A stretch of 64,000 bases of DNA from IMGVR_UViG_3300029922_000001:248001-312000; one strand, 5' to 3'. Shown: positions 3,435 to 50,068, counted from the stretch's first letter. The notes: generated by a model from the sequence alone, not told the origin. A program made the numbers and translations.

Positions 3435-3524
3435 AGGGGCATACTAGAATCAAACTAGTTCATAACGCATTTGCTAGATCATTAACCTAGCAGTGCGTCG
3501 CGATTCTCATTTCGCCAATGCCCC
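3435..3524 (-). tRNA. tRNA-Cys(GCA)-like gene with a 17-nt hairpin insertion in the anticodon loop
   Basis: GGGGCAT/ATGCCCC acceptor, U73, stem ACGCA/TGCGT around the 24-nt loop CTGCTAGGTTAATGATCTAGCAAA. Confidence 0.8.
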
Positions 3525-3534
3525 AAACTCTCGG

Positions 3535-3610
3535 AGCGCGGAGGGAGAATCGAACTCAACCGAATAATGGTTTTGCAGACCATTCCAATTAACCACTCTG
3601 GTACCCGCGC
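3535..3610 (-). tRNA. tRNA-Cys(GCA)
   Basis: GCGCGGG acceptor, ATGGT-CTGCAAA-ACCAT arm, TTCGATT loop; T-stem has mismatches. Confidence 0.85.
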
Positions 3611-3632
3611 ATATTTATCTCGCTGAGGTTCT

Positions 3633-4313
3633 TTATACCTCATATTGCTTCATTAATTCTGGATCACTTTGAGCCGCTATCCATTTATCATATTCTTCAA
3701 TTTGCTCTTTAATTTGTTCAGCACTATCTGCTGTTTTAGATTGGCAACTTTTAATGTCGTTTAATTTACTAAATAATGATTCCACAAGAGGATGTTTTGG
3801 TAAATAACATATTCCCTTAGAAGCATAATAATCAATTAATTCTTTTTGTTTAAGTTTTGATTCTAATTTATTTTCTTCTGAACATGAACACTTTGGATGA
3901 AATGCGTTATACATTCTCATATCTTCAATTCTATTTTCTTCAGTGTAAGCACTACAATTAAACAAAATTTCATCATCTTTATCATCCAACTCTAACAGAT
4001 TAATTAATTCTTTAATTTTATAAGTTGGTCGATTTTGCTTGTACCAATCCGATTTTTCGTTCTCTTGATTATTTATTAATAAATTCTGTTTTAATGATGG
4101 TATTAATTTTTCAAAAACCTCATGTAGTGTACTTCCTTTAATTTGCACTCTACCAGCAGGTTGAAAATTTAAATTAAATTTAATATTGCCTTTTTTGGAC
4201 ATTGTTAAAGTCATATGATTCGTTCCACCCATGTTACTTAATCCATCTGGACAATTTTGTAAAAACTCTTTTAATATTTTTAATGTTTTATCTATATTCA
4301 TTTCCTTTACCAA
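3633..4313 (-). CDS. hypothetical protein
   Basis: ORF track; lies between tRNA blocks. Confidence 0.75.
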   Translation of the reverse strand: MVKEMNIDKTLKILKEFLQNCPDGLSNMGGTNHMTLTMSKKGNIKFNLNFQPAGRVQIKGSTLHEVFEKLIPSLKQNLLINNQENEKSDWYKQNRPTYKIKELINLLELDDKDDEILFNCSAYTEENRIEDMRMYNAFHPKCSCSEENKLESKLKQKELIDYYASKGICYLPKHPLVESLFSKLNDIKSCQSKTADSAEQIKEQIEEYDKWIAAQSDPELMKQYEV

Positions 4314-4648
4314 GATATTGTTAACTGATAACTTTCATAACTTTCATATCCTTCGTATTCACGATCCTTTACAAGAACAACACCATATTCTTCGTCTTCA
4401 AAAAACTTTTTAACATTACAGGCAATTTGATAATTATATAATGTCTCCGTATGACATTCATACTCACCCCTTTTGGCATGTTTTTCAATTAATTTTTTAC
4501 ATTCATCAATGGTAGTTATTTCTAACTGTTGAAGTCGTAGTTTTTCAGATTGAGCGAATTGTCTTTCTTCTTCTTCAAGAGCAAGTCTTCTTGCTTCAAT
4601 TTGTTCTTTAGCTTCTTGAGTTAATCTTCTTGCTTCTTGGATGTTCAT
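4307..4648 (-). CDS. hypothetical coiled-coil protein
   Basis: ORF track; AGGTATAAT-7nt-ATG. Confidence 0.75.
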   Translation of the reverse strand: MNIQEARRLTQEAKEQIEARRLALEEEERQFAQSEKLRLQQLEITTIDECKKLIEKHAKRGEYECHTETLYNYQIACNVKKFFEDEEYGVVLVKDREYEGYESYESYQLTISW

Positions 4649-4656
4649 TGTAACTA

Positions 4657-4803
4657 TTATACCTTACGACGAATTCGTATGAGAGTATTATCTACTTCTT
4701 TTCTTGTGATACCTAAAAAAGCAGCAATTGCACGATAAGATTTATTTAAACCATAAGCAATATAAACCTTGGTTTCATTTTGAGTTAATTCTAAATTATT
4801 CAT
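4657..4803 (-). CDS. 48-aa stand-alone sigma-70 region 4-like HTH protein (not in ORF track)
   Basis: MNNLELTQNETKVYIAYGLNKSYRAIAAFLGITRKEVDNTLIRIRRKV; TGCTATAAT-7nt-ATG; resembles the SigH C-terminus. Confidence 0.7.
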   Translation of the reverse strand: MNNLELTQNETKVYIAYGLNKSYRAIAAFLGITRKEVDNTLIRIRRKV

Positions 4804-4828
4804 AAGTGTATTATAGCATATTTTCTCG

Positions 4829-4917
4829 CGGGAGCTTAGAGATTCGAACTCTAAAGGCGCTTTTTACACGCCTAGCTGTTTTCAAGACAGTTTACCGTCA
4901 CCAATGGCAGAACTCCC
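4829..4917 (-). tRNA. tRNA-Ser(TGA)
   Basis: Cloverleaf with CT-TGA-AA loop, long V-arm, G73. Confidence 0.9.
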
Positions 4918-4926
4918 GTATTATTT

Positions 4927-5013
4927 CGCGGTAAGTAAAATATTCGAATTCGATTCAAAGAATATGAAGACAAACTTTGTTTAATTATTGATTCTATTTT
5001 AGGTAGACTTAAC
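4927..5013 (-). pseudogene. possible decayed tRNA
   Basis: tRNA-sized spacer with GTTAAGT/ACTTACC ends, TTCGAAT and a G-CGAAA trailer; internal arms do not fold. Confidence 0.35.
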
Positions 5014-5025
5014 AATTAAACATCT

Positions 5026-5113
5026 CGAAGACACCAGAATCGAACTGGACTCGCTTTTTACACGAGCGAACAACTTTCCAGGTTGCCGTCATCACCATCA
5101 GACATTATCTTCC
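5026..5113 (-). tRNA. tRNA-Ser(GGA), 3' acceptor end imperfect
   Basis: GCAAC-CTGGAAA-GTTGT arm, long V-arm; the 3' end runs directly into CGAGA. Confidence 0.75.
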
Positions 5114-5125
5114 ATATTATCTCGG

Positions 5126-5198
5126 AGCGCCAAATTGGAATCGAACCAATTTCCTATTGCTTACCAAGCAATCGTTCACCCACATGAACTTTAAGCGC
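5126..5198 (-). tRNA. tRNA-Thr(GGT)
   Basis: ATTGC-TTGGTAA-GCAAT arm; complete cloverleaf. Confidence 0.9.
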
Positions 5199-5208
5199 AT
5201 ATATCTCG

Positions 5209-5282
5209 TGGAGGCTCAATAGAGAATCAAACTCTACTCTGCGGTTTACAAAACCGCTGCATCGTCACAATGCTTTAAAGCC
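5209..5282 (-). tRNA. tRNA-Thr(TGT), CCA encoded
   Basis: GCGGT-TTTGTAA-ACCGC arm; complete cloverleaf. Confidence 0.9.
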
Positions 5283-5295
5283 ATATTATCTCGTA

Positions 5296-5394
5296 AGCCT
5301 AGTATCTGATTCGAACAGATGATGTTTGTATTCTTACTTGTTCTATTTTTTAACACAACAAGGTAAGTGCAATCGACCGCTATGCAAACTAGGC
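5296..5394 (-). tRNA. tRNA-Thr(TGT)-like gene with an 18-nt insertion in the anticodon loop
   Basis: GCCTAGT/ACTAGGC acceptor, U73, CTTAC/GTAAG stem around the 25-nt loop CTTGT[TGTGTTAAAAAATAGAAC]AA. Confidence 0.7.
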
Positions 5395-5405
5395 ATTTTA
5401 TCTCG

Positions 5406-5494
5406 TGGAGGAAGGCAGCGGGATCGAACCGCAGACGTATTTCAGTCCGTATAGTTTAGCAAACTATCCTAATCGCCGTTTTAGATTACCTTCC
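5406..5494 (-). tRNA. tRNA-Ser(GCT), CCA encoded
   Basis: ATAGT-TTGCTAA-ACTAT arm, long V-arm. Confidence 0.9.
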
Positions 5495-5502
5495 ATTATC
5501 TC

Positions 5503-5586
5503 GGCTAACGGGGAGATTCAAACTCCCGAAGGTTTTCACCGATGCATTACGAGTGCATTCCAATTGATCAACTATGGGACGTTAGC
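5503..5586 (-). tRNA. tRNA-Thr(CGT) with an atypical long variable arm
   Basis: GCTAACG/CGTTAGC acceptor, ATGCA-CTCGTAA-TGCAT arm, V-arm GGT-GAAA-ACC. Confidence 0.8.
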
Positions 5587-5910
5587 ATTTAACATTTCTA
5601 CATATCTAACTAAAACCTGACCGTGACACCTTTCTTGTTCGCCCCAACCAGTTTTAGGTCTACAAAAGCATACCAATTTTTTATTATGTAAGGATTTTAC
5701 CTTATCTTTGAATATTAAATCAGTTTCTAATCTATTTTTTAGATATTTTTCATATTCTGGTAAAGTAGAACTAGGAACTTGACCTGGAGATAATACTATT
5801 GGATTGCCAAAATATCCACTCTGTCCTTTCCCTGCTCTACCTATGTAGACATATTCAGAATCTTGTTCCCAACCCTTGTTGAGATGATATAAATTTACTA
5901 CTTCAGTCAT
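5572..5910 (-). CDS. DUF4326-type protein
   Basis: VYIGR...FGNP...LHNKKLVCFCRP...CHGQVL. Confidence 0.8.
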   Translation of the reverse strand: MTEVVNLYHLNKGWEQDSEYVYIGRAGKGQSGYFGNPIVLSPGQVPSSTLPEYEKYLKNRLETDLIFKDKVKSLHNKKLVCFCRPKTGWGEQERCHGQVLVRYVEMLNANVP

Positions 5911-6463
5911 TGACTTCCTCTATATATGCTGGTGGCACATATTCTGTTAACCATACACCATTTTCAGAACGATAAAAAACAAATCTATTCAAATCCATTT
6001 GCTTTGAATCCACCTTCAATAGTGCATACTTTCCTCTTCTAGAACCAACATTAATTGCTGTTTCTATGTTTTCAGAAAGATGAACCGCATGACGATACAT
6101 CTTCTTAATTCCTTCCTCTAAAATCATTGGTACAGCATCATATGTTGTACCATGATAAAGAATGGCAGGAGGATTCAATGGAACTAACTGAAGATCAACT
6201 TCACAAGAATGACCTTGATTGGCTCTAATTCTTGCTCCTGATTCATCATAAGAATATCTTTGCTTATTATTTTCCGTCACTAACTGATCTAAATCAGCCT
6301 TTGTGATGTTAATATTAAACTTTTTCAAACCGTCTAATAGTTGTGTTACGAATACATAACCTCCAAGATCAAGCTTTTCAACTCCAATCTTTTGTGGCTC
6401 ATGTCGCAATATTAACGAAATAAACTTTCCTATTCTTTTAAATTCACGTTCATCCTTAATCAT
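5903..6463 (-). CDS. kptA: RNA 2'-phosphotransferase (Tpt1/KptA)
   Basis: ISLILRHEP, NNKQRY, RIRANQGHS, LYHGT, RHAVHLS, SENGVWLTEYVPP. Confidence 0.95.
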   Translation of the reverse strand: MIKDEREFKRIGKFISLILRHEPQKIGVEKLDLGGYVFVTQLLDGLKKFNINITKADLDQLVTENNKQRYSYDESGARIRANQGHSCEVDLQLVPLNPPAILYHGTTYDAVPMILEEGIKKMYRHAVHLSENIETAINVGSRRGKYALLKVDSKQMDLNRFVFYRSENGVWLTEYVPPAYIEEVND

Positions 6464-6485: not shown

Positions 6486-7016
6486 TTACTTTTTAGGTAA
6501 GAGCATTACTGTCATTTGTTTCCCTTGTAAGAGAATTTCCCTATCTACAGTTACAATATCATTTAGTTTTTCCAAACAATATTCCAACTTTTGCTTTCCA
6601 ATATGAGGGTGAGCGAGTTCTTTTGTTTTGAACTTGCAAACCAACTGCACTTTGTCATGCTTCCCAATAAATTCAACCGCTTTACGAATTGACGTATCCA
6701 AGTCATGTACAGCCGTATTAGGGCTAATACAAAGTGTTTTAAGTTCTTGAGGCTTTTTACGGTTGTCTTTTGCACGTTTTGCCTCTTCATACTTATATTT
6801 GCCATAGCTTACGATTTTGCAGATAGGTGGTTGTACCTTATCAGATACGCACAACAAATCTAAACCAGCATCATATGCTATTTGGATTGCATCCTTCGTG
6901 GGCATTACACCAATATTTTTGTTATTAGCGTCAATGACCGTTACTTCGGTAAATTGCTTAATGAGTCTTTCATTAAGGGGTGGGAATTCTCTGCGATTAC
7001 TTTTTTTCATCATCAT
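6486..7016 (-). CDS. infC: translation initiation factor IF-3
   Basis: LNERL...AGLDLLCVS...PPICKIVSYGKYKYEE...HDL...DKVQL...GKQMTVMLLP. Confidence 0.93.
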   Translation of the reverse strand: MMMKKSNRREFPPLNERLIKQFTEVTVIDANNKNIGVMPTKDAIQIAYDAGLDLLCVSDKVQPPICKIVSYGKYKYEEAKRAKDNRKKPQELKTLCISPNTAVHDLDTSIRKAVEFIGKHDKVQLVCKFKTKELAHPHIGKQKLEYCLEKLNDIVTVDREILLQGKQMTVMLLPKK

Positions 7017-7105
7017 AATAGATTGACCTATTATACCAGGGTATTCTTCTTCATTACAATCTTTCTCTATTCAATTTTCAATGTGCTTGAGTTTTAATTC
7101 TCGGT

Positions 7106-7150
7106 AAATAAAAAACAGGAAGTCCGACTTAGGTCTGTCGGACTTCCTGT
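7106..7150 (-). terminator. intrinsic terminator of the Thr/Ser/Cys leader (attenuator 3:4)
   Basis: 14-bp perfect stem ACAGGAAGTCCGAC/GTCGGACTTCCTGT followed by TTTTTATTT. Confidence 0.9.
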
Positions 7151-7173
7151 TGAATCTTTCTATTTGGTTTTCT

Positions 7174-7263
7174 TTATGCTTGCCCGACAACAGCATTTCT
7201 ACAGCTTCCACAACTTGTGGAACTGGTAGTACTTGATGTTGATGTTGACGTGACTAATTTCAT
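7174..7263 (-). CDS. 29-aa Thr/Ser/Cys-rich leader peptide (putative attenuator; not in ORF track)
   Basis: MKLVTSTSTSSTTSSTSCGSCRNAVVGQA*; GGTATAAT promoter upstream; terminator 23 nt after the stop. Confidence 0.85.
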   Translation of the reverse strand: MKLVTSTSTSSTTSSTSCGSCRNAVVGQA

Positions 7264-7303
7264 TTTAACCTGCTACGTTTATTATACCCAATGTTTTGAT
7301 TGT

Positions 7304-7837
7304 TTACCATGTTTTTTTGCTTTTACCATCAAAACCTGTTTCTTTTAAGATTCTATCCCAAATTTCTTCTTTTGGAGTGTTCCCTAAATATGGATCTTTT
7401 GCCCAATTCAAGTTGGTAATTTCTAGTATAACAGGAAATGGTGGAGTATAGGCTTCAGCTTCTTCTAAAGAAGAAAATTCCATTTCCATACTAAGCAAAT
7501 AATGTCTATGGATCATATATTCATTAATTTCTTCACCGCTAGATAAAAAAGTTCTTCGTTTTTCAACTCTTTTCATTTTTGGTATTAAATTGTAATTATA
7601 AAACCAATTAAAAAGAAAAATTGGGATTTTAATATTGTATTCTTTTCTGACCAAAGGATCTGAGGTTTTTAATTTAAAAGTTAATTCGCATTTATTTGAA
7701 ACTGAATATGTTTTACGAATGCGACAACTTTTAAAAAATGGAAAATATCCTTGTGAAATGTATACGTTGTGTGTTTGAGTATCCCAAGGAATATCATTTT
7801 GATTTACTATAAACTTGCGTTCAATTTCATTAGCCAT
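7304..7837 (-). CDS. CYTH / triphosphate tunnel metalloenzyme
   Basis: EIERKFIV, ISQGY, RIRK, ELTFK, RKEYNIKI, EMEF. Confidence 0.85.
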   Translation of the reverse strand: MANEIERKFIVNQNDIPWDTQTHNVYISQGYFPFFKSCRIRKTYSVSNKCELTFKLKTSDPLVRKEYNIKIPIFLFNWFYNYNLIPKMKRVEKRRTFLSSGEEINEYMIHRHYLLSMEMEFSSLEEAEAYTPPFPVILEITNLNWAKDPYLGNTPKEEIWDRILKETGFDGKSKKTW

Positions 7838-7850: not shown

Positions 7851-8397
7851 TCATTTACCAGGACCCCACTCAAGACCAGGGAATTTATTTAAATTTTCCT
7901 CAATTTCTTTCCAGGGTGTGATTGATAGATATGGCTCTTTCGCCCAAGGCACATGTGTAATCTCTGTAACGTACTTGAAATCAGGAATATAAGCTTGTGC
8001 ATCTTCCAGAGAATCAAATTCCATTTCTACGATTACATAATACTGACCAGGATATTCATTAATTTGTTCTCCTGTTGGAATAATGTGTCGTGTTTTTTTA
8101 GTTTTAGTCATCCAAGGTGTAAGATACCAAAGCGGGAAAAAGACAAATTTAGGGATTTTAAAGTTATATTCCTTCCTGTCCTAAATTGGTCTGTTTATTC
8201 TTGTTTTTCTTGAATGTCAATTCGTATGTGCGGTCTTCATCTGAATATAATTCTTCATAGGTAATGATAGACTCACGAATTCTGAGATTTTTAATTAAAG
8301 GGAAATATCCTTGGGAAATGTCATGCCATTCTATAACATTTTCCCAAGGAATTTGGGTTGGTCGCACTATAAACTTGCGTTCAATTTCATTAGCCAT
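7851..8397 (-). pseudogene. second CYTH paralog, split by a +1 frameshift near 8180
   Basis: The N-half MANEIERKFIV (from 8397) and the C-half RKEYNFKIP...VEMEF are in different frames; 32 identical nt shared with the first copy's start. Confidence 0.75.
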
Positions 8398-8404: not shown

Positions 8405-9382
8405 TTATACTTGAGCAAGTTCGGCTTGTAGCTCTTTAATGCGCTTTTGGAGTTCAAGTTTCTTTTTAAGTGTCGCTTCTTCTCTAAGCAAAGCTTGGAA
8501 TTCAGCATCAACTTCTTCCACTGCAACAGTCTCTAAAGCAACATGCTTCTTTATGGCTTTAGCTGCTTTAGGCATTTCTGTAGCCAAGATTGGTACATAT
8601 CCTCTTAGTATAAGAGTAAGACTTGTTGCATGATCTTCAATATCAATCCATTCTTTTTGACCAAAGGTTTGATTGGATCTGCTACCTTCAACAGTGCAAA
8701 CATCTTGTTCTCTTGATTCATTTAAAGATTTTGGCATAGCATTCGCAAATGAGTCTAAAGAATCCATTGACATGCTTGAAGCGGAATATGTTGGAGAACC
8801 AAAGCTTAATGAATTCAGTGAATTTACTGAATCTGAGCATAATCCTCTTACATTGCTTTTCATGGAAGATTGACCAATTAAAGCATTATTACTACCACAC
8901 CAGACTTCATCATGTCGTCTAGGGTAATGCTTGTAAGGGTATGAATAATCACGATACCAAGGATATGAATAATCATGATAATGATGATGATCTACTACGA
9001 TTGGAATGTAGACTGGTTGTGGTTTTTCTTTTTCTAACCAGAAGAAGGCTTCAACAACACCTTTGGAGCGGTCTTCATTAGAACCATTTTTTCCAAAATC
9101 AATAGCGTCATTACTGTCTAAAGCAGCTAATTTAAAGCATTTGTTGGTTTCATAGAAGCGTTCAAGATCAATTGCGCTGTTAGCGTTAATAATATATCCA
9201 TCACCGGATACATTTTCCCCGTCAATATGAATTTTGACCAAGGCTCTACGATTGTTTTTGTTTCTGAGGCGTAAACTATATTCTGATCCGAATGGAACTA
9301 GTACAGAATGATCGTTTCTCTCTGGGAGAAAGTCGTTTTGATTTTTGAGCTTGATAGCAAGCACGAAGTTTTTGTTATACAT
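8405..9382 (-). CDS. conserved hypothetical large-phage protein with C-terminal coiled coil
   Basis: MYNKNFVLAIK...PFGSEYSLRLRNKN...IHIDGENV; start corrected using the TATAAT box. Confidence 0.75.
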   Translation of the reverse strand: MYNKNFVLAIKLKNQNDFLPERNDHSVLVPFGSEYSLRLRNKNNRRALVKIHIDGENVSGDGYIINANSAIDLERFYETNKCFKLAALDSNDAIDFGKNGSNEDRSKGVVEAFFWLEKEKPQPVYIPIVVDHHHYHDYSYPWYRDYSYPYKHYPRRHDEVWCGSNNALIGQSSMKSNVRGLCSDSVNSLNSLSFGSPTYSASSMSMDSLDSFANAMPKSLNESREQDVCTVEGSRSNQTFGQKEWIDIEDHATSLTLILRGYVPILATEMPKAAKAIKKHVALETVAVEEVDAEFQALLREEATLKKKLELQKRIKELQAELAQV

Positions 9383-9592
9383 ATTTTTAACCATTATAAT
9401 CCTAACTCTTGTCCTCATGAGAGCGTGATTCGGCACCTTAATGGCGAGTGCCAAGGACAATTCTATTATACACCCGTTTTGAGGTTTTTTACCTTCGGAT
9501 TAAAAAACAGTCCAAACACAATAAAATTAATTATAATAAATTACCTTGTGAATAGGCTTGACAGTCTGAGGAATAGGAGGTATTATAACAAC

Positions 9593-16781: not shown

Positions 16782-16841
16782 GCTTTATTATAAGGAAATA
16801 TTGATGGCTTTTACATGAATCAGTTATGGTATACTAACTCC

Positions 16842-26813: not shown

Positions 26814-26892
26814 ACTATTAATATACTGGAAGATACACTAAATTACCTTTAATTAAAGGTATAGGTTCAAATTTATAATAAAATTTATCTCG

Positions 26893-26973
26893 TACTAGGA
26901 AAGGGACTCGAACCCTCAAGGATCATTCGTTCTTAACGAAGTGGGTCTGCCATTTCCCATTATCCACCCTAGC
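26893..26973 (-). tRNA. tRNA-Leu(AAG)-like gene with a non-canonical core
   Basis: Extra GGATAA between acceptor and D-arm, complementary to ATCC in the short variable region; loop TT-AAG-AA; A73. Confidence 0.7.
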
Positions 26974-26986
26974 ATATTAATCTCGG

Positions 26987-27068
26987 TACTAGAGAAGGGA
27001 TTCGAACCCTCAAGGATTTTTGTTTCTAAAACAAAACGGTCTACCGATTCCACGTTATCCACCCTAGC
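26987..27068 (-). tRNA. tRNA-Leu(TAG)-like gene with the same non-canonical core
   Basis: GCTAGGGTGGATAA...ATCCTTGAGGGTTCGA shared with its neighbour; loop TT-TAG-AA; A73. Confidence 0.7.
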
Positions 27069-27078
27069 ATTTATCTCG

Positions 27079-27162
27079 TCCCGGCGAGTGGACTCGAACC
27101 ACCACGCCCTTTCAGGCAACAGATTTTGAGTCTGCCGCATCTACCAATTACACCACACCGGG
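27079..27162 (-). tRNA. tRNA-Leu(CAA)
   Basis: Canonical type II cloverleaf, CT-CAA-AA. Confidence 0.92.
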
Positions 27163-27181
27163 ATATTTCTCGTATAAGAAA

Positions 27182-27361
27182 TTAATTCTTATTTTGTGAA
27201 TCAAGTTGTCTTACTCTACTAAATAAAGCATCTCTCATTTCTTTGTTTTCACTTACTTCTTTAGCGTATGCACCCATCATATTTCTAAACATTTTTTGAC
27301 CTTCTTCAGTATTCATTGCTGATTCAATTATTTTCATTTTTTCAGGACTTGTTATAATCAT
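27182..27361 (-). CDS. 59-aa hypothetical protein inside the Leu array (not in ORF track)
   Basis: GGAG SD; MIITSPEKMKIIESAMNTEEGQKMFRN...DSQNKN*. Confidence 0.7.
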   Translation of the reverse strand: MIITSPEKMKIIESAMNTEEGQKMFRNMMGAYAKEVSENKEMRDALFSRVRQLDSQNKN

Positions 27362-27382
27362 ATTAATTCTCCAATATCTCGG

Positions 27383-27484
27383 TGAGCAAACAGGGACTTG
27401 AACCCTGATGACATTTTACTGTCGATGGGTTAGCAAAATTCTGATCTTGCTAAGCCCATTGCGTCTACATTTCGCCATTCGCCC
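27383..27484 (-). tRNA. tRNA-Leu(TAG)-like gene with an 18-nt hairpin insertion in the anticodon loop
   Basis: ATGGG/CCCAT stem around CTTAG[CAAGATCAGAATTTTGCT]AA; long V-arm; A73. Confidence 0.8.
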
Positions 27485-27493
27485 ATATTCTCG

Positions 27494-27579
27494 TGCGGAG
27501 TAAAAGATTTGAACTTTCACCTGTTGATAAGACAGAATGGGACCTTAGCCCATCGCGGCTACCATTACGCCAACCCCGC
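27494..27579 (-). tRNA. tRNA-Leu(AAG)
   Basis: ATGGG-CTAAGGT-CCCAT arm, long V-arm, A73. Confidence 0.85.
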
Positions 27580-27588
27580 ATATTCTCG

Positions 27589-27670
27589 TCCGGGCGAGAG
27601 GGTTTGAACCTCCATGTCTTGCGACGGCAGGTTTTAAACCTGCTGCGGCTACCAATTTCGCCACACCCGG
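27589..27670 (-). tRNA. tRNA-Leu(TAA)
   Basis: GCAGG-TTTAAAA-CCTGC arm, long V-arm. Confidence 0.92.
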
Positions 27671-27697
27671 ATATGTAACAACAATACTTAAAACAAC

Positions 27698-27736
27698 AAA
27701 AAAAAGCCTGATTAGGATCAGATCCCAACCAGGCTT
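27698..27736 (-). terminator. intrinsic terminator of the Leu leader (attenuator 3:4)
   Basis: AAGCCTGGTTGGGAT/ATCCTAATCAGGCTT stem plus T-tract, 27 nt before tRNA-Leu(TAA). Confidence 0.9.
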
Positions 27737-27757
27737 AACAAGTAAAATACAGTACTC

Positions 27758-27832
27758 TTATGCAGCTAGTTGGGTTCCTCCTAATAGTAGGAGGCTTGTT
27801 AAACCTTGTAGTTGCAAAGAATTCTTGTTCAC
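27758..27832 (-). CDS. 24-aa Leu-rich leader peptide (putative attenuator; not in ORF track)
   Basis: GTG start 6 nt after TGCTATAAT; MNKNSLQLQGLTSLLLLGGTQLAA*; 8 Leu codons. Confidence 0.88.
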   Translation of the reverse strand: MNKNSLQLQGLTSLLLLGGTQLAA

Positions 27833-27928
27833 GTATATATTATAGCATGATCCGAATGAAATTAACCATAATTTCTATAAATTATTTGAAAGAAGGAATT
27901 ATTCATATAGACATTGTAGATATTTAGT

Positions 27929-29275
27929 GTGAAACAAATTATTACAGCTAAATTAAAATTAGAAACAAATAAAGAACAATTTAAAGAATTAACTAATCTT
28001 AGTTTAGCTTATTGTGGCGCTTTGAATTTTGGCTCTAATAAAGCCTTTGAATTAGACAAAACTACTAATGCTAACTTATTGCACAAAAGTATATATCGAG
28101 AATGTCGTGATAAATTTGGATTACCATCACAATTAGCTTGTAGCGTTTCTAGATATGTTACTGCTTCTTATAAAACATTGTGGACAATTACCAATAAAAA
28201 TATTAAAGCAAGAAAAAACAAAGAAACTAAGAGAGTTTATAAAGGACTGAATAAAGCTCCAAAATATATATCAAGAACGACTATGTTTCAATATGGTAGA
28301 GATTTTACATTCAAGAAGGATCAACAAATTAGTATTATTACTCTTAATGGAAGAATTCTTCTAGATTATAAAGGATGGAATAAACATCTTAATTTAATTA
28401 AAGATGAAAATACCAAAATTGGTGGAGCTAAACTTTATTATGATAAAGCTAAGAAAACTTTCTATCTCTTAGTTAGTTTAGAAATAGAAACACAAGAAGA
28501 AAAACAAATTAACACAATAGGTATTGATTTGGGTCAAAGATATTTGGCTGTGGTAACTGATACACAAGATAATACATTGTTTATTCCTGGTAAGGAATGT
28601 ATTAATCAAGTTGGAAAATATCAACGAGTTCGTAGTAGTCTTCAAAAAAAGATTAAAACGAATAAGAAAAATGGTAAAGGCACTCGTTCTATAACTAGAA
28701 AATTAATCCAAGTTAAAGGACAAGAGAGACGGTATAGATTATCATTAAATCATCAAACAGCAAGTTCGATATTACAAAGATTTCCTAATTCAAATATAGG
28801 ATTAGAAAATCTTAAAGATATTAGAACAAGAACAGAAAGACATAGCAGTAAAAAAGATAGCAAAAAAAGAAAAGAAGCTAATCGTAATAAAGCTTCTTGG
28901 TCTTTTAATGAGTTACAACAATTAATAGAATATAAAGCTAATTTATATGGTAGTAAAATATTTAAAGTAGATGCCCATTATACATCTCAAATGTGTACTA
29001 AATGTGGTTATACTTCTAAAGAAAACAGACCTAAAAGTGGCTTGAATTTTATTTGTTGTAATTGTAATTTTAAATTACATGCTGATTTGATTGGAGCTAG
29101 AAATATAGCTATGAGAACATTGTTATCTAGACAAGATTTAGATAATAAGGGGCATTTATCAATTGTCCCAGTAAGCGGCAAAGCCGCTTTAGATACCTCG
29201 AACAGTGAAGTTAAAGCGGAATCCTTGAAAAAGTATTCTGAATTGAGATGGAGTTCGGAGGCAAACTTAACTTAA
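27929..29275 (+). CDS. tnpB: TnpB RNA-guided endonuclease (IS200/IS605 family)
   Basis: RuvC motifs GIDLG, GLENLK and HADLIGARNI; zinc finger YTSQMCTKCG...CCNC. Confidence 0.93.
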   Translation: MKQIITAKLKLETNKEQFKELTNLSLAYCGALNFGSNKAFELDKTTNANLLHKSIYRECRDKFGLPSQLACSVSRYVTASYKTLWTITNKNIKARKNKETKRVYKGLNKAPKYISRTTMFQYGRDFTFKKDQQISIITLNGRILLDYKGWNKHLNLIKDENTKIGGAKLYYDKAKKTFYLLVSLEIETQEEKQINTIGIDLGQRYLAVVTDTQDNTLFIPGKECINQVGKYQRVRSSLQKKIKTNKKNGKGTRSITRKLIQVKGQERRYRLSLNHQTASSILQRFPNSNIGLENLKDIRTRTERHSSKKDSKKRKEANRNKASWSFNELQQLIEYKANLYGSKIFKVDAHYTSQMCTKCGYTSKENRPKSGLNFICCNCNFKLHADLIGARNIAMRTLLSRQDLDNKGHLSIVPVSGKAALDTSNSEVKAESLKKYSELRWSSEANLT

Positions 29276-45573: not shown

Positions 45574-45927
45574 GGGCTCGTAAGGGAATCGACATGTTGC
45601 ATATATTGATGAACTTGAGTGAGAGATTACCCTTGGCTCTCTAAAAATGGGTAGAAAACATAAACGGCAAATCATATGCTTATGTAGGTTAATTCCTACC
45701 GCAAAAAATAAAGGTTAGTTGAGGACACTTTATTGAGCGTTGAAAAAATTCAACTACGCTATTAGGGTTGGTGGACCTTGGACCTGAAATAGTTAAATTA
45801 ATCAAGTATCCGGTTGCAGCGGTTTGATTTATACCAACATGCTTCCTATTAAATAAATCTACGCTCATAAAAAATAATTATTGGTATATCAGTAATGGAA
45901 ACGGCTTCGAGTGCCGTCGGGTCCACC
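45574..45927 (+). ncRNA. ssrA: tmRNA
   Basis: 5' GGGCTCG...ATCGAC; 3' ACGGC-TTCGAGT-GCCGT-CGGGTCC-A-CC with G3:U70; tag frame GGC AAA TCA TAT GCT TAT GTA GGT TAA at 45666-45692; TGGTATAAT promoter. Confidence 0.9.
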
Positions 45928-45934
45928 CGCGAAA

Positions 45935-47291: not shown

Positions 47292-47618
47292 TTAAAGATA
47301 ATAGCTTAGAAATTTAATTGTGATATCGCAATTAAAAGTTTTTTTAATTTTATTAATTTCTTCAGGAAAAGCTTGTTCTAAATTTTTAATTGATATTTTA
47401 TTTAAATTTAATTCTAACACTTGTTCTTCACTATTTTCATGATCTTTTATGTAATAATCGCCGTTATAGTTAGGCAGTAAATATAAATGATTATTTTTAG
47501 GAGAAAACACCCATAATTTTTGAAGCAATACCGTTTCTGCAAATGCAGCAAGTTCTCCATAACTTGAATTAAATACTTGAATTACTGGTCCTAAATAAAC
47601 ATTTTTCTTCATAGACAT
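47292..47618 (-). CDS. hypothetical protein
   Basis: ORF track. Confidence 0.65.
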   Translation of the reverse strand: MSMKKNVYLGPVIQVFNSSYGELAAFAETVLLQKLWVFSPKNNHLYLLPNYNGDYYIKDHENSEEQVLELNLNKISIKNLEQAFPEEINKIKKTFNCDITIKFLSYYL

Positions 47619-47633
47619 AATTAGTATTATAAT

Positions 47634-48344
47634 TTATTTGAGTGCTTTACTGTTTTTGGGGACATCAATATAGGTTGTATATCCACCATTCTTAAAGTTT
47701 GCTGAACCACCATTACAATTGATGGTTCCCATATGTCTACTGTGCGCTTTACTCATTTTAACTAGAGGATACTTAATGGTGTATTTGTAACCGTTGATCC
47801 AGTATTTTTCTTGTTCTACTTTTTCAGGATCTGGGTTTTCTTTAGCCAATTCCTCTGCCAAATCCTCTTCTGCTCTTTTAAGAGAAGCCTTGGCTTGTTC
47901 AAGAGCTTCTTCAATTTTTCTACGATCTTTAGGAGTGAGATTTCCTTTGATAGCCAATCCTTTTGCACTACCAACTTTTTTAACCACTTCTACAAATTCT
48001 TCAGTAAAGTACTCATCCCAGCAACTACCAAAATGAATTCTGCCTGAAGGCTTAACTTCGTAAACATCCCAGTCGCCTTCAAAAGCTTCTTTCCAGATTG
48101 TGTAATGTGGCGCTTCTTGCCCAGTCATATAAATAACTTCCCCGCAGTGATAGAAGTTCTTTTTGTTATGAAAAGGATTGATTCTATCTCCAGGTTTGTA
48201 TTTAGTAGGCGAAGCGTGATAGAGTTTTTGGGAGTATTTATCCTTTTCTCTCTTTTCAGCACGTTTTTCCGCTTTGATCATAGTAAAAATTATACCACAT
48301 TGGAAGCTTGAAAAGTGTCGGACTTTGTAAATAACTTCCGACAT
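47634..48344 (-). CDS. possible Arr-like ADP-ribosyltransferase-fold protein
   Basis: LYHASP...PGDRINP...IYMT...VYEVKPSG resembles Arr motifs (weak). Confidence 0.4.
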   Translation of the reverse strand: MSEVIYKVRHFSSFQCGIIFTMIKAEKRAEKREKDKYSQKLYHASPTKYKPGDRINPFHNKKNFYHCGEVIYMTGQEAPHYTIWKEAFEGDWDVYEVKPSGRIHFGSCWDEYFTEEFVEVVKKVGSAKGLAIKGNLTPKDRRKIEEALEQAKASLKRAEEDLAEELAKENPDPEKVEQEKYWINGYKYTIKYPLVKMSKAHSRHMGTINCNGGSANFKNGGYTTYIDVPKNSKALK

Positions 48345-48370
48345 TTTTCAAGTTGTGGTATACTAAGTTA

Positions 48371-48634
48371 ATGGAACGCAGGAAGATAGAAAAATGCCCA
48401 AGTTGTGATTCACCAAATATTGATCCTGGTGAGTATTGGTTTAAATACCACACTGATAGATATTTACTGTGTCATTCTTGTGGAGAAACATATGATAACG
48501 CCACTAGTGCTGAGCTAGATAGAGATATTGAACTGCGTAAACAGCGTTATCGGGAAATTGACGCTGCCCAAGAAGAAAAAGATTATCAATTGTATTTGAA
48601 ACTAAAAACTAGATTTAAGGGTAGAGATGTTTGA
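48371..48634 (+). CDS. small zinc-ribbon protein
   Basis: CPSC...CHSC; GTGGTATACT-6nt-ATG. Confidence 0.7.
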   Translation: MERRKIEKCPSCDSPNIDPGEYWFKYHTDRYLLCHSCGETYDNATSAELDRDIELRKQRYREIDAAQEEKDYQLYLKLKTRFKGRDV

Positions 48635-48926
48635 AAATATTAAAAAATGGTGGAGTCTTGAAATAAACAAAATTACATGTCCTCATGAATATGAAATTGA
48701 TTATTTCTATAGTAACGGAGTTTGCAGAGAACCTTATTATTGGTGTCCTGATTGTAAAAGGGGTATAGAACCTGAAGGTATTGAGTTTGCTCCTGGTGAA
48801 TGGCGTAATCGCACTCCAGATGATGACATCATTATTGTTCATTGGAATCCAGATGCGCCCATTTCTAAAGAATGTCTCAAAATGAGAGAAGAATTTGAAG
48901 CAACACAATATAAATGCAAGATATAA
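48627..48926 (+). CDS. small Cys-containing protein
   Basis: CPH...WCPDC. Confidence 0.65.
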   Translation: MFENIKKWWSLEINKITCPHEYEIDYFYSNGVCREPYYWCPDCKRGIEPEGIEFAPGEWRNRTPDDDIIIVHWNPDAPISKECLKMREEFEATQYKCKI

Positions 48927-48932
48927 TGAACT

Positions 48933-49202
48933 ATGGAAAAAATTCGATCAGAATATAAGATAGGTAAATTTAGTGATTTTGACAACGTTGTATTTGATTT
49001 GCAACTTGTTGAAATCGAAGGACCAGAAGGTAGTTCAAATAATGTAGTTCAAATAATGCCAAGAATTGATGGCGCTTTTCTTCAGAGAACTATTTTGTTT
49101 ATGCCAAGTCCAGAAGGTCTTCGTCGCTTAGGCAATGCATTTCTTGATTTAGCAAATGATGTAACAAATCTTGAGTCAGAGCAACTAAATTCGCAAAGTT
49201 AG
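48933..49202 (+). CDS. hypothetical protein
   Basis: ORF track. Confidence 0.65.
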   Translation: MEKIRSEYKIGKFSDFDNVVFDLQLVEIEGPEGSSNNVVQIMPRIDGAFLQRTILFMPSPEGLRRLGNAFLDLANDVTNLESEQLNSQS

Positions 49203-49217
49203 GGGTATAATACGAAT

Positions 49218-49310
49218 ATGAGACTATAGGTAACATCAAAAATATCGGTTTCCAGAGTAAGGAGGGCATTTAACATGTTGTAGAACATTATTAAATCACG
49301 TCCTCCTTAA
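49218..49310 (+). promoter_or_regulatory. leader ORF with two in-frame amber codons and RBS-sequestering hairpins
   Basis: GGGGTATAAT-7nt-ATG; M R L TAG V T S K I S V S R V R R A F N M L TAG N I I K S R P P TAA; hairpin 49312-49367 covers the next RBS. Confidence 0.65.
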
Positions 49311-49368
49311 ATTGTTTATTTCATTCGCAATTCGTCATTCTCGTGTGAATTCAAAGGAAATAAACAAA

Positions 49369-49758
49369 ATGGAACTATTAAAACAATTAAATAAAACTCA
49401 AACAGAACAATTTTTCATCAACACTAATTATAAAACTATGGTCGTTAATTGGAAACAGGCTTGTAAAGATGGCGTAGAATTAACCGTAGCTGATAATTTA
49501 TTATATACTATCATGAGAGGCAAAAGTTTGTTCAAAGCTTTTCGCCCATTATCTTCAACTAAAGCTTTATTAAGAGGTTGTGGTGAATATCAATCATACA
49601 CCAATGCTTATTATATGATTGTATATGGCAAATATAATAAGCATATTTTTGGTGATGTTAATATTAAGTCAATTCAAGCTTGTGTACCATCTGGTGGAGA
49701 TATTGATGATCAAAATGCTTTATATTATATTATAGGATGGAATAATGCATCAAAATAA
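49369..49758 (+). CDS. hypothetical protein coupled to the Pth2-like gene
   Basis: AAAGGA SD; NLLYTIMRGKS..KAFRP motif; overlaps the next gene. Confidence 0.75.
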   Translation: MELLKQLNKTQTEQFFINTNYKTMVVNWKQACKDGVELTVADNLLYTIMRGKSLFKAFRPLSSTKALLRGCGEYQSYTNAYYMIVYGKYNKHIFGDVNIKSIQACVPSGGDIDDQNALYYIIGWNNASK

Positions 49759-50068
49759 ACCACCTTATATTTACATATTTGTCCGGCAAGATATTCCTCT
49801 TGCCGATCAAATAGTCCAAACAGGTCATTCCTGTCAAGAATCAGGTGCAAAATTTGGATGTCCTGAAAATTGTCATTTGGTCTTACTAAGCTGTAAGAAT
49901 GAGCACGATCTTTTGTAGGTAGCTCAAAGATTAGAAATGAATCAAATTAAATTTATTAATTTTTTTGAGCCTGACGATCAAATGGGTTACACAGCTATTT
50001 GTACTGAACCATTAATAGATCGTCGTAATCTCTTTAGAAAATACAAACTCTGGAAATATGAGGTATAA
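49745..50068 (+). CDS. Pth2-like peptidyl-tRNA hydrolase with an in-frame TAG at codon 58 (readthrough or pseudogene; not in ORF track)
   Basis: YIYIFVRQDIPLADQIVQTGH...LVLLSCKNEHDLL*VAQRL...FFEPD..GYTAICTEP...FRKYKLW. Confidence 0.75.

What the first reader, a model, noticed from the sequence alone, without database searches (positions are those of the whole stretch)
3435..50068. System view: phage senses translation state through a panel of codon-specific leader ORFs
Three independent sub-32-codon leaders occur in 64 kb, each compositionally matched to what lies downstream: Leu to tRNA-Leu, Thr/Ser/Cys to tRNA-Thr/Ser/Cys, and amber to a TAG-interrupted Pth2-like gene. tRNA genes are sorted by isotype rather than mixed, as demand-driven control would predict. 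Inference: the phage supplies each tRNA family only when the host pool fails, possibly as a counter to anticodon-nuclease defences. This predicts matching leaders ahead of the phage's other tRNA arrays outside this window.
Basis: inference. Interest (0 to 1): 0.9.

Follow-up and report, generated by a model that had tools for sequence, protein, structure and literature searches.

The report
Leader-peptide attenuators controlling phage tRNA arrays
A 441-kb phage puts a tiny gene rich in certain amino acids, then a transcription stop signal, in front of each block of tRNA genes for those amino acids, so it probably makes a tRNA family only when ribosomes stall for lack of it.

Summary
Two of the three claimed leaders are real.

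- **Thr/Ser/Cys:** a promoter, a 29-codon ORF (7174-7263, minus; TSTSTSSTTSSTSCGSC) and a 15-bp terminator precede IF3-Tpt1-DUF4326 and the Thr/Ser/Cys tRNAs.
- **Leu:** a 24-codon ORF (27758-27832, minus; LLLL) and a terminator sit 34 nt ahead of an all-Leu array.
- **Same contig, outside the window:** a YPYHPYPYHP leader precedes a His/Tyr/Pro array. A Lys-rich leader precedes a Lys array.
- **Conservation:** the Thr/Ser/Cys and His/Tyr/Pro leaders recur in relatives. Changes inside the runs are synonymous or stay within the class, and the terminator stem shows compensatory changes.
- **Independent lineage:** in GenBank LR756511.1, a Ser/Leu/Tyr leader precedes the only isotype-sorted array. 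Its mixed arrays have none.
- **Pairing test:** true leader-array pairing ranks 1 of 120 permutations.

Nascent-RNA folding suggests that stalling favours an antiterminator. This step is inferred and is weak for some leaders.

The "amber leader" (49218-49310) cannot be told from chance. The TAG-interrupted gene is real and distantly PTH2-like. TAG is not generally recoded.

No such regulation of tRNA genes turned up in the literature searches.

The parts
7281..7286 (-). -10 box (TATAAT within TGGGTATAAT) of the Thr/Ser/Cys leader transcript
   Evidence: Read directly. TGGGTATAAT is invariant in the window, L254 and L257.
7174..7263 (-). Thr/Ser/Cys leader ORF, 29 codons, MKLVTSTSTSSTTSSTSCGSCRNAVVGQA. 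Its 16 regulatory codons cover all 7 anticodons of the array.
   Evidence: Ranked first of 2052 short ORFs. Binomial P 1.8e-6. Orthologous leaders occur in L254 and L257.
7182..7190 (-). Proposed antiterminator segment TTGTCGGGC, complementary to GTCCGACAG in the 5' arm and loop of the terminator
   Evidence: Constrained nascent-RNA folds. ddG -8.1 kcal/mol, 4.3% of shuffles as good. The TGTTGTCGG core is nearly invariant in three genomes (one mismatch in L254). Inferred.
7104..7151 (-). Intrinsic terminator (attenuator): 15-bp stem, 8-nt loop, T-run. It starts 22 nt after the leader stop codon.
   Evidence: Two compensatory base-pair changes among three genomes.
7030..7059 (-). Second promoter-like site (TTGTAA-18-TGgTATAAT) between the attenuator and the IF3 gene
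   Evidence: A GGTATAAT at the same place is read in L254 and L257.
6486..7016 (-). Translation initiation factor IF3 homologue, first gene after the attenuator
   Evidence: Pfam IF3_N 1.3e-23 and IF3_C 3.1e-19.
5903..6463 (-). RNA 2'-phosphotransferase Tpt1/KptA
   Evidence: Pfam PTS_2-RNA 1.6e-44.
5572..5910 (-). DUF4326 protein. Its 3' end overlaps the first tRNA.
   Evidence: Pfam 2.8e-14.
3433..5586 (-). Thr/Ser/Cys tRNA array. Order: Thr-cgt, Ser-gct, Thr-tgt (18-nt insert), Thr-tgt, Thr-ggt, Ser-gga, Ser-tga, three small ORFs, Cys-gca, Cys-gca (17-nt insert).
27839..27847 (-). Extended -10 promoter element TGcTATAAT of the Leu leader. The GTG start lies 6 nt downstream, so the transcript is probably leaderless.
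   Evidence: Read directly. Inferred function.
27758..27832 (-). Leu leader ORF, 24 codons, (M)NKNSLQLQGLTSLLLLGGTQLAA. Its Leu codons TTG, CTA, TTA and CTC cover anticodons caa, tag, taa and aag of the array.
   Evidence: 8 of 23 residues Leu, P 3.5e-3.
27764..27774 (-). Proposed antiterminator segment (CCCAAC...), pairing with GTTGGG of the terminator 5' arm
   Evidence: ddG -17.8 kcal/mol, 0 of 300 shuffles as good. Inferred.
27696..27736 (-). Intrinsic terminator (attenuator): 15-bp stem plus T8. It starts 21 nt after the leader stop and ends 34 nt before the first tRNA.
26892..27670 (-). Leu tRNA array. Order: Leu-taa, Leu-aag, Leu-tag (18-nt insert), a 59-aa ORF, Leu-caa, then two non-canonical Leu-like tRNAs (anticodon loops read as tag and aag).
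   Evidence: The reading of the last two is my own.
27929..29275 (+). TnpB (IS605 OrfB / Cas12f-like), divergent from the Leu leader. Not part of the system, but the source of a rival reading.
   Evidence: Pfam. The leader region is not repeated elsewhere in the window.
49218..49310 (+). ATG TTG TAG ... TAA with an AAGGAGG/CCTCCTT hairpin. Judged not distinguishable from chance.
49745..50068 (+). Gene of a small family distantly related to PTH2, interrupted by one in-frame TAG (49916-49918) at a variable alignment column
   Evidence: The pieces were searched apart.

Best explanation
These are ribosome-mediated (leader-peptide) transcription attenuators. What they regulate is the phage's own tRNA genes, not amino-acid biosynthesis genes.

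**Anatomy.** Each isotype-sorted tRNA array is preceded by four elements in order:
- a sigma-70-type promoter;
- a short ORF;
- a run of codons in that ORF that samples the anticodons of the array downstream;
- a strong intrinsic terminator starting 19-28 nt after the stop codon in seven of the eight leaders measured (80 nt in the Lys leader).

**Proposed working (inferred).**
- When the cell can decode those codons, the ribosome runs to the stop codon. There it covers an RNA segment that would otherwise pair with the 5' arm of the terminator. The terminator forms and the array is not transcribed.
- When the matching charged tRNAs are scarce, the ribosome stalls in the codon run. Scarcity could come from poor host supply of AT-rich codons, host tRNA decay during infection, or cleavage by a defence nuclease. 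The antiterminator then forms in the nascent RNA and RNA polymerase reads into the tRNA genes. In the Thr/Ser/Cys unit it also reads into IF3, Tpt1 and DUF4326.
- The new tRNAs relieve the stall. Each tRNA family is therefore under its own negative feedback.

**Shown:** the anatomy, the codon-to-anticodon match, conservation, and co-occurrence with isotype sorting.

**Inferred:** translation of the ORFs, the antiterminator, and the direction of the response.
For: **1. Four of four retrievable arrays of this contig have a matching leader plus terminator.**
- Thr/Ser/Cys.
- Leu.
- His/Tyr/Pro: MKAINTNMNSEMNEVNANVNTTSAYPYHPYPYHPKWRNTLV before His, Tyr, Pro, Tyr, Pro tRNAs (L121).
- Lys: MKTMDLKLKRKR before Lys, Sup, Lys, Lys tRNAs (L139).

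**2. Statistics.**
- The Thr/Ser/Cys and His/Tyr/Pro leaders each rank first of 2052 short ORFs, with 10 of 10 residues in the best window.
- True pairing ranks 1 of 120 permutations.

**3. Codon-level match, read.**
- Every distinct sense anticodon of the four arrays has a cognate codon in its leader. The amber suppressor (cta) in the Lys array is the exception.
- In LR756511.1, 9 of 10 anticodons are covered.

**4. No promoter room.** In the Leu, His/Tyr/Pro and Lys units the terminator lies about 20-35 nt before the first tRNA or tRNA-like gene. Expression therefore needs read-through.

**5. Conservation.**
- L254 is about 70% identical in DNA. All five substitutions inside its Thr/Ser/Cys run are synonymous or Ser-to-Thr, while the flanking residues differ.
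- L257 is a distant relative that keeps the composition with a different sequence.
- The terminator has two compensatory pairs.
- PYHPYPYH is kept in L259 and L258, and L258 has a different but perfect terminator.

**6. Nascent-RNA folds.**
- In all four leaders a ribosome stalled on regulatory codons lets an upstream segment pair with the terminator 5' arm.
- A ribosome at the stop codon abolishes that pairing.
- The pairing is stronger than in shuffles for Leu (0/300), Lys (0.013), L257 (0.023) and the window Thr/Ser/Cys leader (0.043).

**7. Independent lineage.**
- LR756511.1 carries an AAGGA Shine-Dalgarno motif, a GTG start, the peptide MHTFSASLRLSSYSLSSLLYSNVRRGT and a 17-bp terminator.
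- These precede Ser x4, Leu, Tyr x2, Leu x4.
- None of its other 28 tRNA clusters (mixed arrays or singletons) has such a unit.
Against: - With the full leader transcribed, the minimum-energy fold keeps the terminator in every ribosome state. The antiterminators (-2 to -18 kcal/mol) are weaker than the terminators (-21 to -27 for the Thr/Ser/Cys, Leu and His/Tyr/Pro units). The switch would have to be kinetic.
- Shuffle support is not significant for the His/Tyr/Pro leaders (0.15-0.19) or for L254 (0.47).
- The Leu and Lys leaders lack a Shine-Dalgarno motif, and the Leu leader starts with GTG. Their composition is not exceptional by itself. No relatives could be found for them.
- A second promoter follows the Thr/Ser/Cys attenuator, so that array is not solely dependent on read-through.
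- The whole 441-kb genome could not be scanned. Arrays without the CGAGA spacer would have been missed.
- In LR756511.1 most tRNAs have no leader.
- There is no expression data, and the host is unknown.
Confidence: 0.75

Rival explanations
1. The units are real translated sensors, but the logic or the level of control differs. Efficient leader translation might promote read-through (positive feedback or licensing). Alternatively, stalling might act through Rho, RNA decay or processing rather than through an RNA antiterminator.
For: - Full-length folds never lose the terminator.
- Antiterminator support is weak for the His/Tyr/Pro leaders and L254.
- A conserved CGAGAWAAAT trailer after each tRNA points to dedicated RNA processing.
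Against: - In seven of the eight leaders measured the stop codon lies 19-28 nt before the terminator arm (80 nt in the Lys leader). A terminating ribosome cannot reach the hairpin but can cover the proposed antiterminator.
- This is the geometry of classical attenuators.
- The Leu and Lys antiterminators are far better than shuffles.
Confidence: 0.12
2. The short ORFs are not regulators. They might be small peptides with their own function, for example Ser/Thr/Cys-rich modified-peptide precursors. Or they might be chance ORFs in promoter-terminator units that merely insulate neighbouring genes. For Leu, the region might be the left end of the adjacent TnpB insertion element.
For: - The Thr/Ser/Cys-rich peptide superficially resembles cores of modified peptides.
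- TnpB lies 97 nt from the Leu leader.
- The Leu and Lys compositions alone are unremarkable.
Against: - Five independent leader-array pairs match isotypes, ranking 1 of 120, and match at codon level.
- There are no peptide-modification genes nearby.
- Substitutions preserve the codon class rather than the sequence.
- The arrays have no other promoter.
- The Leu leader region is not repeated near the second TnpB or anywhere else in the window.
Confidence: 0.05
3. The amber ORF at 49218-49310 is a genuine suppression sensor. Read-through of its two TAGs by the phage suppressor tRNA opens the hairpin and licenses the downstream gene pair, including the TAG-interrupted PTH2-like gene.
For: - The ORF is intergenic, has TATAAT 6 nt upstream as the Leu leader does, and ends inside a -20 kcal/mol hairpin.
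- The phage encodes a tRNA with anticodon CTA.
- The downstream gene has an in-frame TAG at a tolerant position.
Against: - There are 79 comparable ORFs in the window, and three share the TATAAT plus hairpin features.
- No consensus promoter or terminator is called.
- The T-run is interrupted.
- TAG is an ordinary stop for 12 of 95 long ORFs, and there is no other convincing in-frame TAG gene.
- A distant relative has the same gene pair uninterrupted. A homing-endonuclease gene abuts it, so no such ORF precedes it.
- The suppressor's own array has a Lys leader without TAG.
Confidence: 0.07

Closest known systems
Leader-peptide transcription attenuators of amino-acid biosynthesis operons (trpL, hisL, leuL, thrL, ilvL, pheL of enterobacteria). 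Described from my own knowledge, with a general description in PMC1183508.
   Same: - A short ORF in the 5' leader carries a run of regulatory codons, followed by an intrinsic terminator.
- The terminator's formation is proposed to depend on where the ribosome sits.
- leuL also has four consecutive Leu codons, and thrL is Thr-rich.
   Different: - The regulated genes are tRNA genes (plus IF3 and Tpt1), not biosynthetic enzymes.
- One leader mixes two or three amino acids and samples each anticodon of the array.
- The setting is a huge phage.
- There is no match to Rfam leader families or any other cis-regulatory family.
- The terminators are stronger than the predicted antiterminators.
Leader peptides ahead of aminoacyl-tRNA synthetase genes (pheM-pheST, from my own knowledge; His leader ahead of hisS paralogues in bacilli, PMC2965389)
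   Same: A cognate-codon leader controls a component of the decoding machinery for that same amino acid.
   Different: The target there is a protein enzyme with a single amino-acid specificity. Here the target is the tRNA genes themselves. The two aaRS genes in the window have no such leader.
T-box riboswitches
   Same: They sense the state of one tRNA species and switch a terminator or antiterminator ahead of genes tied to that tRNA.
   Different: T-boxes bind the tRNA directly and need no ORF. No T-box match was found, and the leaders here are only about 100-190 nt.
Polycysteine leaderless short ORFs acting as Cys-responsive attenuators in mycobacteria (bioRxiv 10.1101/834739)
   Same: Very short ORFs that start at or near the transcript 5' end, with runs of one codon type, acting as attenuators. 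This is a precedent for the Shine-Dalgarno-less Leu and Lys leaders.
   Different: Those control cysteine-related operons of a bacterium, not tRNA genes.
Ordinary phage tRNA clusters, for example Xanthomonas phage XacN1
   Same: Many tRNA genes are clustered in a large phage genome.
   Different: - XacN1 tRNAs are of mixed isotype and interspersed with ORFs.
- The mixed clusters of LR756511.1 have no leader-terminator unit.
- The leader goes with isotype sorting.

Membership tests
Ribosome-mediated (leader-peptide) transcription attenuator | Short ORF in the 5' leader with a run of codons cognate to what is regulated | tested here: met
   Each leader matches the isotypes, and the anticodons, of its array.
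Ribosome-mediated (leader-peptide) transcription attenuator | Intrinsic terminator between the leader ORF and the regulated genes | tested here: met
   Stems of 15-17 bp plus T-run in the Thr/Ser/Cys, Leu, His/Tyr/Pro and LR756511.1 units. The Lys unit has a weaker 10-bp hairpin plus T-run. Compensatory changes.
Ribosome-mediated (leader-peptide) transcription attenuator | Mutually exclusive antiterminator whose formation depends on ribosome position | tested here: inconclusive
   Present in nascent-RNA folds of all four leaders. Better than shuffles for four of eight leaders. Absent from full-length minimum-energy folds.
Ribosome-mediated (leader-peptide) transcription attenuator | Leader ORF has translation start signals | tested here: inconclusive
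   - ATG or GTG with an AGG/AAGGA motif 7-9 nt upstream in the Thr/Ser/Cys, His/Tyr/Pro and LR756511.1 leaders.
- The Leu (GTG) and Lys (ATG) leaders lie 6-9 nt after the -10 box with no Shine-Dalgarno motif. They are presumably leaderless.
Ribosome-mediated (leader-peptide) transcription attenuator | Read-through responds to supply of the cognate charged tRNA | not testable with these tools
   Needs reporter or in-vitro assays.
Rfam leader families (Thr_leader, His_leader, Leu_leader and similar) | Match to the family covariance model | tested here: not met
   No such hit at E <= 1 in the window or E <= 0.1 in L121 and L139.
T-box riboswitch | Match to the T-box model (specifier loop plus T-box sequence) | tested here: not met
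   No hit.
PTH2 peptidyl-tRNA hydrolase (for the TAG-interrupted gene) | Match to Pfam PF01981 above the gathering score | tested here: inconclusive
   - The pieces give no hit even at E <= 1 and no BLASTP similarity to the phage's true PTH2.
- Of seven full-length homologues, one passes (26.4 bits against 23) and three score below the cut-off.
Stop-codon-recoded phage (TAG read as sense) | TAG avoided as a stop and frequent in frame within genes | tested here: not met
   TAG ends 12 of 95 long ORFs. TAG-joined ORF pairs (10) are fewer than TAA-joined (27) or TGA-joined (17) controls. A suppressor tRNA(CTA) does exist.
IS200/IS605 element end (for the Leu leader region) | Sequence repeated at the ends of other copies of the element | tested here: inconclusive
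   No repeat of 27680-27928 in the window. The second TnpB is only 31% identical, so this is uninformative.

The most novel reading that the evidence does not exclude
Huge phages carry a panel of codon-family-specific stalling sensors. The panel detects loss of particular host tRNAs, including cleavage by anticodon-nuclease defences. It answers by transcribing replacement tRNAs together with repair and rescue functions. Some replacement tRNAs have an anticodon loop masked by a short insert. The repair and rescue functions are Tpt1, RNA ligase, PTH2, IF3 and tmRNA. Isotype sorting of tRNA arrays would be the genomic footprint of this control.
Probability: 0.25. Interest if true: 0.92.

Novelty: new variant of a known kind. 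Interest (0 to 1): 0.85.

Why it matters
Leader-peptide attenuation is a textbook mechanism, but its known targets are amino-acid biosynthesis genes and a few synthetase genes.

Here the same logic appears to be wired to tRNA genes. A virus would then measure, codon family by codon family, whether the infected cell can still decode, and would top up only what is missing.

If true, this would:
- give a reason why some phage tRNA arrays are sorted by isotype;
- offer a simple sequence signature for finding regulated arrays in metagenomes;
- supply natural codon-specific stalling reporters;
- make testable the long-standing question of why large phages carry so many tRNAs (codon-usage matching, compensation for host tRNA decay, or counter-defence).

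The design occurs in at least two unrelated huge-phage lineages, one of them a public GenBank genome.

Five literature searches, and a term search for "leader", "attenuat" and "terminator" in the paper that described the GenBank genome, found no description of it.

Tried and rejected
**Searches for relatives**
- The GenBank phage collection has no close relative by megablast. The distant search matched only single tRNAs. The IF3 protein search gave at most 38% identity.
- tRNA-spacer patterns in IMG/VR returned only the four arrays of the source contig plus chance hits. L016 looked like a same-size relative but is unrelated.
- Relatives of the Leu region could not be found. The 224-aa neighbour and the DUF4419 protein found only the source contig.

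**Structure modelling**
- Full-length constrained minimum-energy folding as a test of antitermination always keeps the terminator. I replaced it with a nascent-RNA model.
- Column-wise pair counts for the His/Tyr/Pro terminator fail because the L258 hairpin is out of register.

**Rival readings tested**
- The IS-end explanation for the Leu leader found no repeat.
- General TAG recoding is rejected.
- The PTH2 identity of the interrupted gene could not be shown by Pfam on the pieces or by BLASTP against the true PTH2. The PDB sequence search gave nothing meaningful.
- A Thr/Ser/Cys-rich short ORF just outside the window (L053 744 and 833) looks like antisense chance, by inspection of the sequence.

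**Other candidate leaders**
- No other terminator-linked cognate-rich ORF exists in the window. The two aaRS genes have none.

Full report
**Where the window comes from.** The window is positions 248001-312000 of IMGVR_UViG_3300029922_000001, the same sequence as scaffold Ga0302280_1000004. The contig is 441,498 bp and about 33% G+C. It is rich in translation genes:
- IF3, Tpt1/KptA and DUF4326;
- a class II aaRS, a TyrRS-like aaRS, an RNA ligase fused to HNH, and a PARP-like protein;
- a tmRNA at 62.9 bits;
- two TnpB genes.

All tRNA genes of the window are on the minus strand, so "upstream" means higher coordinates.

**The observation: Leu.** The Leu unit reads, in order:
- an extended -10 box TGcTATAAT (27847-27839);
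- six bases later, GTG and a 24-codon ORF (27832-27758) encoding NKNSLQLQGLTSLLLLGGTQLAA;
- 21 nt after its stop, a 15-bp hairpin plus T8 (27736-27696);
- 34 nt later, the first of six Leu or Leu-like tRNAs (taa, aag, tag with an insert, caa, and two odd ones).

**The observation: Thr/Ser/Cys.** This leader is not next to the tRNAs but 1.6 kb upstream. It reads:
- TGGGTATAAT, an AGG motif and ATG at 7263;
- the peptide MKLVTSTSTSSTTSSTSCGSCRNAVVGQA;
- a 15-bp terminator at 7151-7114;
- a second promoter-like site;
- IF3, Tpt1 and DUF4326;
- Thr-cgt, Ser-gct, Thr-tgt, Thr-tgt, Thr-ggt, Ser-gga, Ser-tga, three small ORFs, and Cys-gca twice.

The leader's codons are ACG, ACA, ACT, ACC, TCA, TCC, AGT, AGC and TGT. 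They can be read by every one of the seven distinct anticodons of the array, and by nothing else that is needed (for the codons; for the anticodons).

A pattern built on the conserved trailer that follows each tRNA (CGAGA[T/A]A..AT) retrieved two further arrays of the same contig.

L121 (contig 5.3-12.2 kb) reads:
- TTGACA-17-TATAAT, AAGG and ATG;
- MKAINTNMNSEMNEVNANVNTTSAYPYHPYPYHPKWRNTLV;
- a 16-bp terminator;
- His-like tRNA genes, then His-gtg, Tyr-gta, Pro-agg, Tyr-gta, Pro-tgg, and a Tyr-like (with insert) and a Pro-like gene.

L139 (contig 170 kb) reads:
- TTGACA-17-TATAAT and ATG;
- MKTMDLKLKRKR;
- alternative hairpins and a terminator;
- Lys-ttt, a CTA-anticodon suppressor, Lys-ctt twice, an unassigned stretch of about 340 nt, and one more tRNA with an insert.

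So all four arrays I could reach have a leader of matching composition.

**Is it more than chance?**
- Among 2052 short ORFs (8-45 codons) in 79.4 kb of this phage, the Thr/Ser/Cys and His/Tyr/Pro leaders are each the single best for their amino-acid set (10 of 10 in the best window).
- The Leu and Lys leaders are only nominally enriched (P 3.5e-3 and 5e-3). Their case rests on position and architecture.
- With five independent leader-array pairs, the true pairing is the best of 120 permutations (score 15.7 against 12.0 for the next).
- My terminator scan finds seven strong terminators in the whole window. Two of them are these attenuators, and no other has a cognate-rich ORF.

**Conservation of the Thr/Ser/Cys leader.**

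| Locus | Relation to the window | Leader peptide | What follows |
|---|---|---|---|
| L254 (ENA/JGI scaffold) | about 70% DNA identity, same gene order | MRQLTSTSTSSTTSSTTCGSCKVVVDGRTR | Terminator, IF3-Tpt1-DUF4326, Ser and Thr tRNAs |
| L257 (distant) | neighbouring protein 43% identical | MLFNVTTTTSGSSTTTGSSCGTRHVVGQAIP | Terminator and IF3 |

- The five substitutions inside the L254 run are ACG>ACA, TCA>TCG, AGT>AGC, AGT>ACT and TGT>TGC. Four are synonymous and one is Ser-to-Thr. The flanking residues differ.
- The terminator stem shows two compensatory pairs (C-G to A-T, and A-T to G-C).
- The segment TGTTGTCGG that I propose as antiterminator is nearly invariant, with one mismatch in L254.

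**Conservation of the His/Tyr/Pro leader.**
- L259 (295-kb ENA scaffold) has MKTINTNMNSEMNEVNVNVYPYHPYPYHPKWRNTLV before His, His, Pro, one uncertain call (ARAGORN: Ser-gct), Pro, Pro, Tyr, Tyr, Pro.
- L258 (distant, 47% G+C locally) has ...AMPYHPYPYHLRWRDALG. A different, perfect 17-bp terminator follows, then His and Pro tRNAs.
- In all three genomes a true PTH2 gene sits just upstream.

**An independent lineage.** GenBank LR756511.1 is a 595-kb huge phage of 42% G+C with no sequence relation to this one. I scanned it piece by piece and found 65 tRNAs in 29 clusters.
- Only one cluster is sorted by isotype: Ser x4, Leu, Tyr x2, Leu x4.
- Only that one is preceded by a strong terminator (17 bp plus T-run) with a short ORF ending 23 nt before it.
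- From its AAGGA Shine-Dalgarno motif and GTG, the ORF reads MHTFSASLRLSSYSLSSLLYSNVRRGT. It uses all six Ser codons, four Leu codons (TTA, TTG, CTA, CTT) and TAT. That covers 9 of the array's 10 anticodons.
- The mixed clusters and singletons have nothing of the kind.
- Xanthomonas phage XacN1 is a further example of mixed, ORF-interspersed tRNAs.

It also shows that the control is not universal for phage tRNAs.

**Mechanism.**
- Full-length folds keep the terminator whatever part is masked by a ribosome.
- I then folded only the RNA made before the 3' arm exists. In all four leaders a ribosome held on the regulatory codons leaves an upstream segment free to pair with the terminator's 5' arm. 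A ribosome at the stop codon covers that segment.
- The pairing is stronger than in 300 shuffles for Leu (0), Lys (0.013), L257 (0.023) and the window Thr/Ser/Cys leader (0.043). It is not stronger for His/Tyr/Pro (0.15-0.19) or L254 (0.47).
- The stop-to-terminator distance is 19-28 nt in seven of eight leaders.

I therefore favour classical attenuation logic, working kinetically: hungry codons lead to antitermination, then tRNA synthesis, then relief. The anatomy, the codon match and the conservation are shown. Translation, the antiterminator and the sign of the response are inferred.

**The amber leg.**
ATG TTG TAG ... TAA (49218-49310), ending in an AAGGAGG...CCTCCTT hairpin.
- Such ORFs are common. 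There are 92 in 79 kb and 79 in the window. Four have TATAAT upstream, and three of those have an equally stable hairpin.
- No promoter or terminator is called there.
- TAG is a normal stop in this window.
- The interrupted gene is real. Its N-terminal piece has about 140 uninterrupted homologues. The TAG falls at a variable column (A, E, V, K or G). The family is only marginally PTH2-like.
- A distant phage carries the same two-gene module uninterrupted, directly after a homing-endonuclease gene, so no such ORF precedes it.
- The phage does have a suppressor tRNA, so read-through is possible. A recent nonsense mutation is an equally good reading.

**Comparison with what is known.**
- The units work like leader-peptide attenuators and meet the anatomical criteria. 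They match no Rfam leader or T-box model.
- What differs is the target: tRNA genes. The multi-isotype "codon panel" design also differs.
- Full-text searches found leader peptides for biosynthetic operons, for hisS (PMC2965389), and leaderless poly-Cys ORFs in mycobacteria (10.1101/834739). They found nothing on tRNA arrays.
- The paper that published LR756511.1 contains none of the words "leader", "attenuat" or "terminator".

**Limits.**
- The genome was not scanned in full.
- No relatives were found for the Leu and Lys units.
- The host is unknown.
- There are no expression data.

Noticed in passing
window 3433-3524, 5296-5394, 27381-27484; L121 about 2673-2784; L139 2302-2399: - One tRNA per array carries a 17-24-nt insert in the anticodon loop. 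The 3' part of the insert is complementary to the 5' part of the loop.
- If a staggered cut with a 2-nt 3' overhang is assumed in that helix, the spliced anticodons read Cys-GCA, Thr-TGT, Leu-TAG, Tyr-GTA and Lys-TTT. Each matches its array and the tRNA's class.
- ARAGORN places the inserts differently and calls Val, Arg and Gln.
- A Tpt1 gene lies in the same operon and an RNA ligase is in the window. This hints at phage-encoded tRNA splicing or masking of the anticodon.
   Followed up: partly
window 3420-5600 and 26890-27680; L121; L139; L254; L259: Nearly every tRNA is followed, after the discriminator base or a partial CCA, by a conserved trailer CGAGA(T/A)A(A/T)AT(G). The trailer is shared by close relatives (L254, L259) but not by L258 or LR756511.1. 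It may be a processing signal.
   Followed up: partly
L139 1717-1789: A tRNA with anticodon CTA (amber suppressor) sits among the Lys tRNAs. It is only 66-70% identical to them, so its amino-acid identity is unknown. TAG is not generally recoded in the window.
   Followed up: partly
window 45574-45928 (+): A phage-encoded tmRNA (Rfam 62.9 bits, E 3.6e-22; ARAGORN tag GKSYAYVG). The default gathering-threshold run missed it.
   Followed up: partly
L121 1289-1750; L258 1616-2101; L259 5001-5402: A true PTH2 peptidyl-tRNA hydrolase gene lies immediately upstream of the His/Tyr/Pro leader in all three genomes. In L259 an ADP-ribosylglycohydrolase gene precedes it. This may be linked to peptidyl-tRNA drop-off from stalled leader translation.
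   Followed up: no
window 26892-26973 and 26985-27068 (-): Two paralogous tRNA-like genes end the Leu array. They have good acceptor and T arms, a long D region and a short variable region. I read their anticodon loops as AAG and TAG (Leu), whereas ARAGORN calls Ser-act and Lys-ttt at low score.
   Followed up: partly
window 27929-29275 (+) and 35196-36305 (-); L258 4689-5627: TnpB (OrfB_IS605 plus Cas12f-like TNB) genes occur repeatedly next to tRNA arrays in this phage group. A weak HEARO RNA hit (28 bits) overlaps the 3' end of the second copy at 35181-35287.
   Followed up: no
L139 1960-2300: A stretch of about 340 nt, G+C-richer and without an ORF, lies between the Lys tRNAs and the last tRNA of the array. 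It has no Rfam match at E <= 0.1. It may be an unknown structured RNA or intron.
   Followed up: no
window 9308-10891 (+), 16815-18290 (+), 58286-59314 (+), 62703-63899 (+): A PARP-like protein with WGR and regulatory domains, a class II aaRS (D/K/N type), an HNH-RNA ligase fusion and a TyrRS-like aaRS. None has a leader-terminator unit.
   Followed up: partly
window 1612-1717 and 2122-2227; 7806-7837 and 8366-8397: A 106-bp direct repeat at 92% identity and an exact 32-bp repeat showed up in a self-BLAST.
   Followed up: no
window 4657-4803 (-): A 48-aa ORF between the Ser and Cys tRNAs has a weak sigma-70 region-4-like helix-turn-helix (E 1e-4, below the Pfam cut-off). It has its own TGcTATAAT box.
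   Followed up: no
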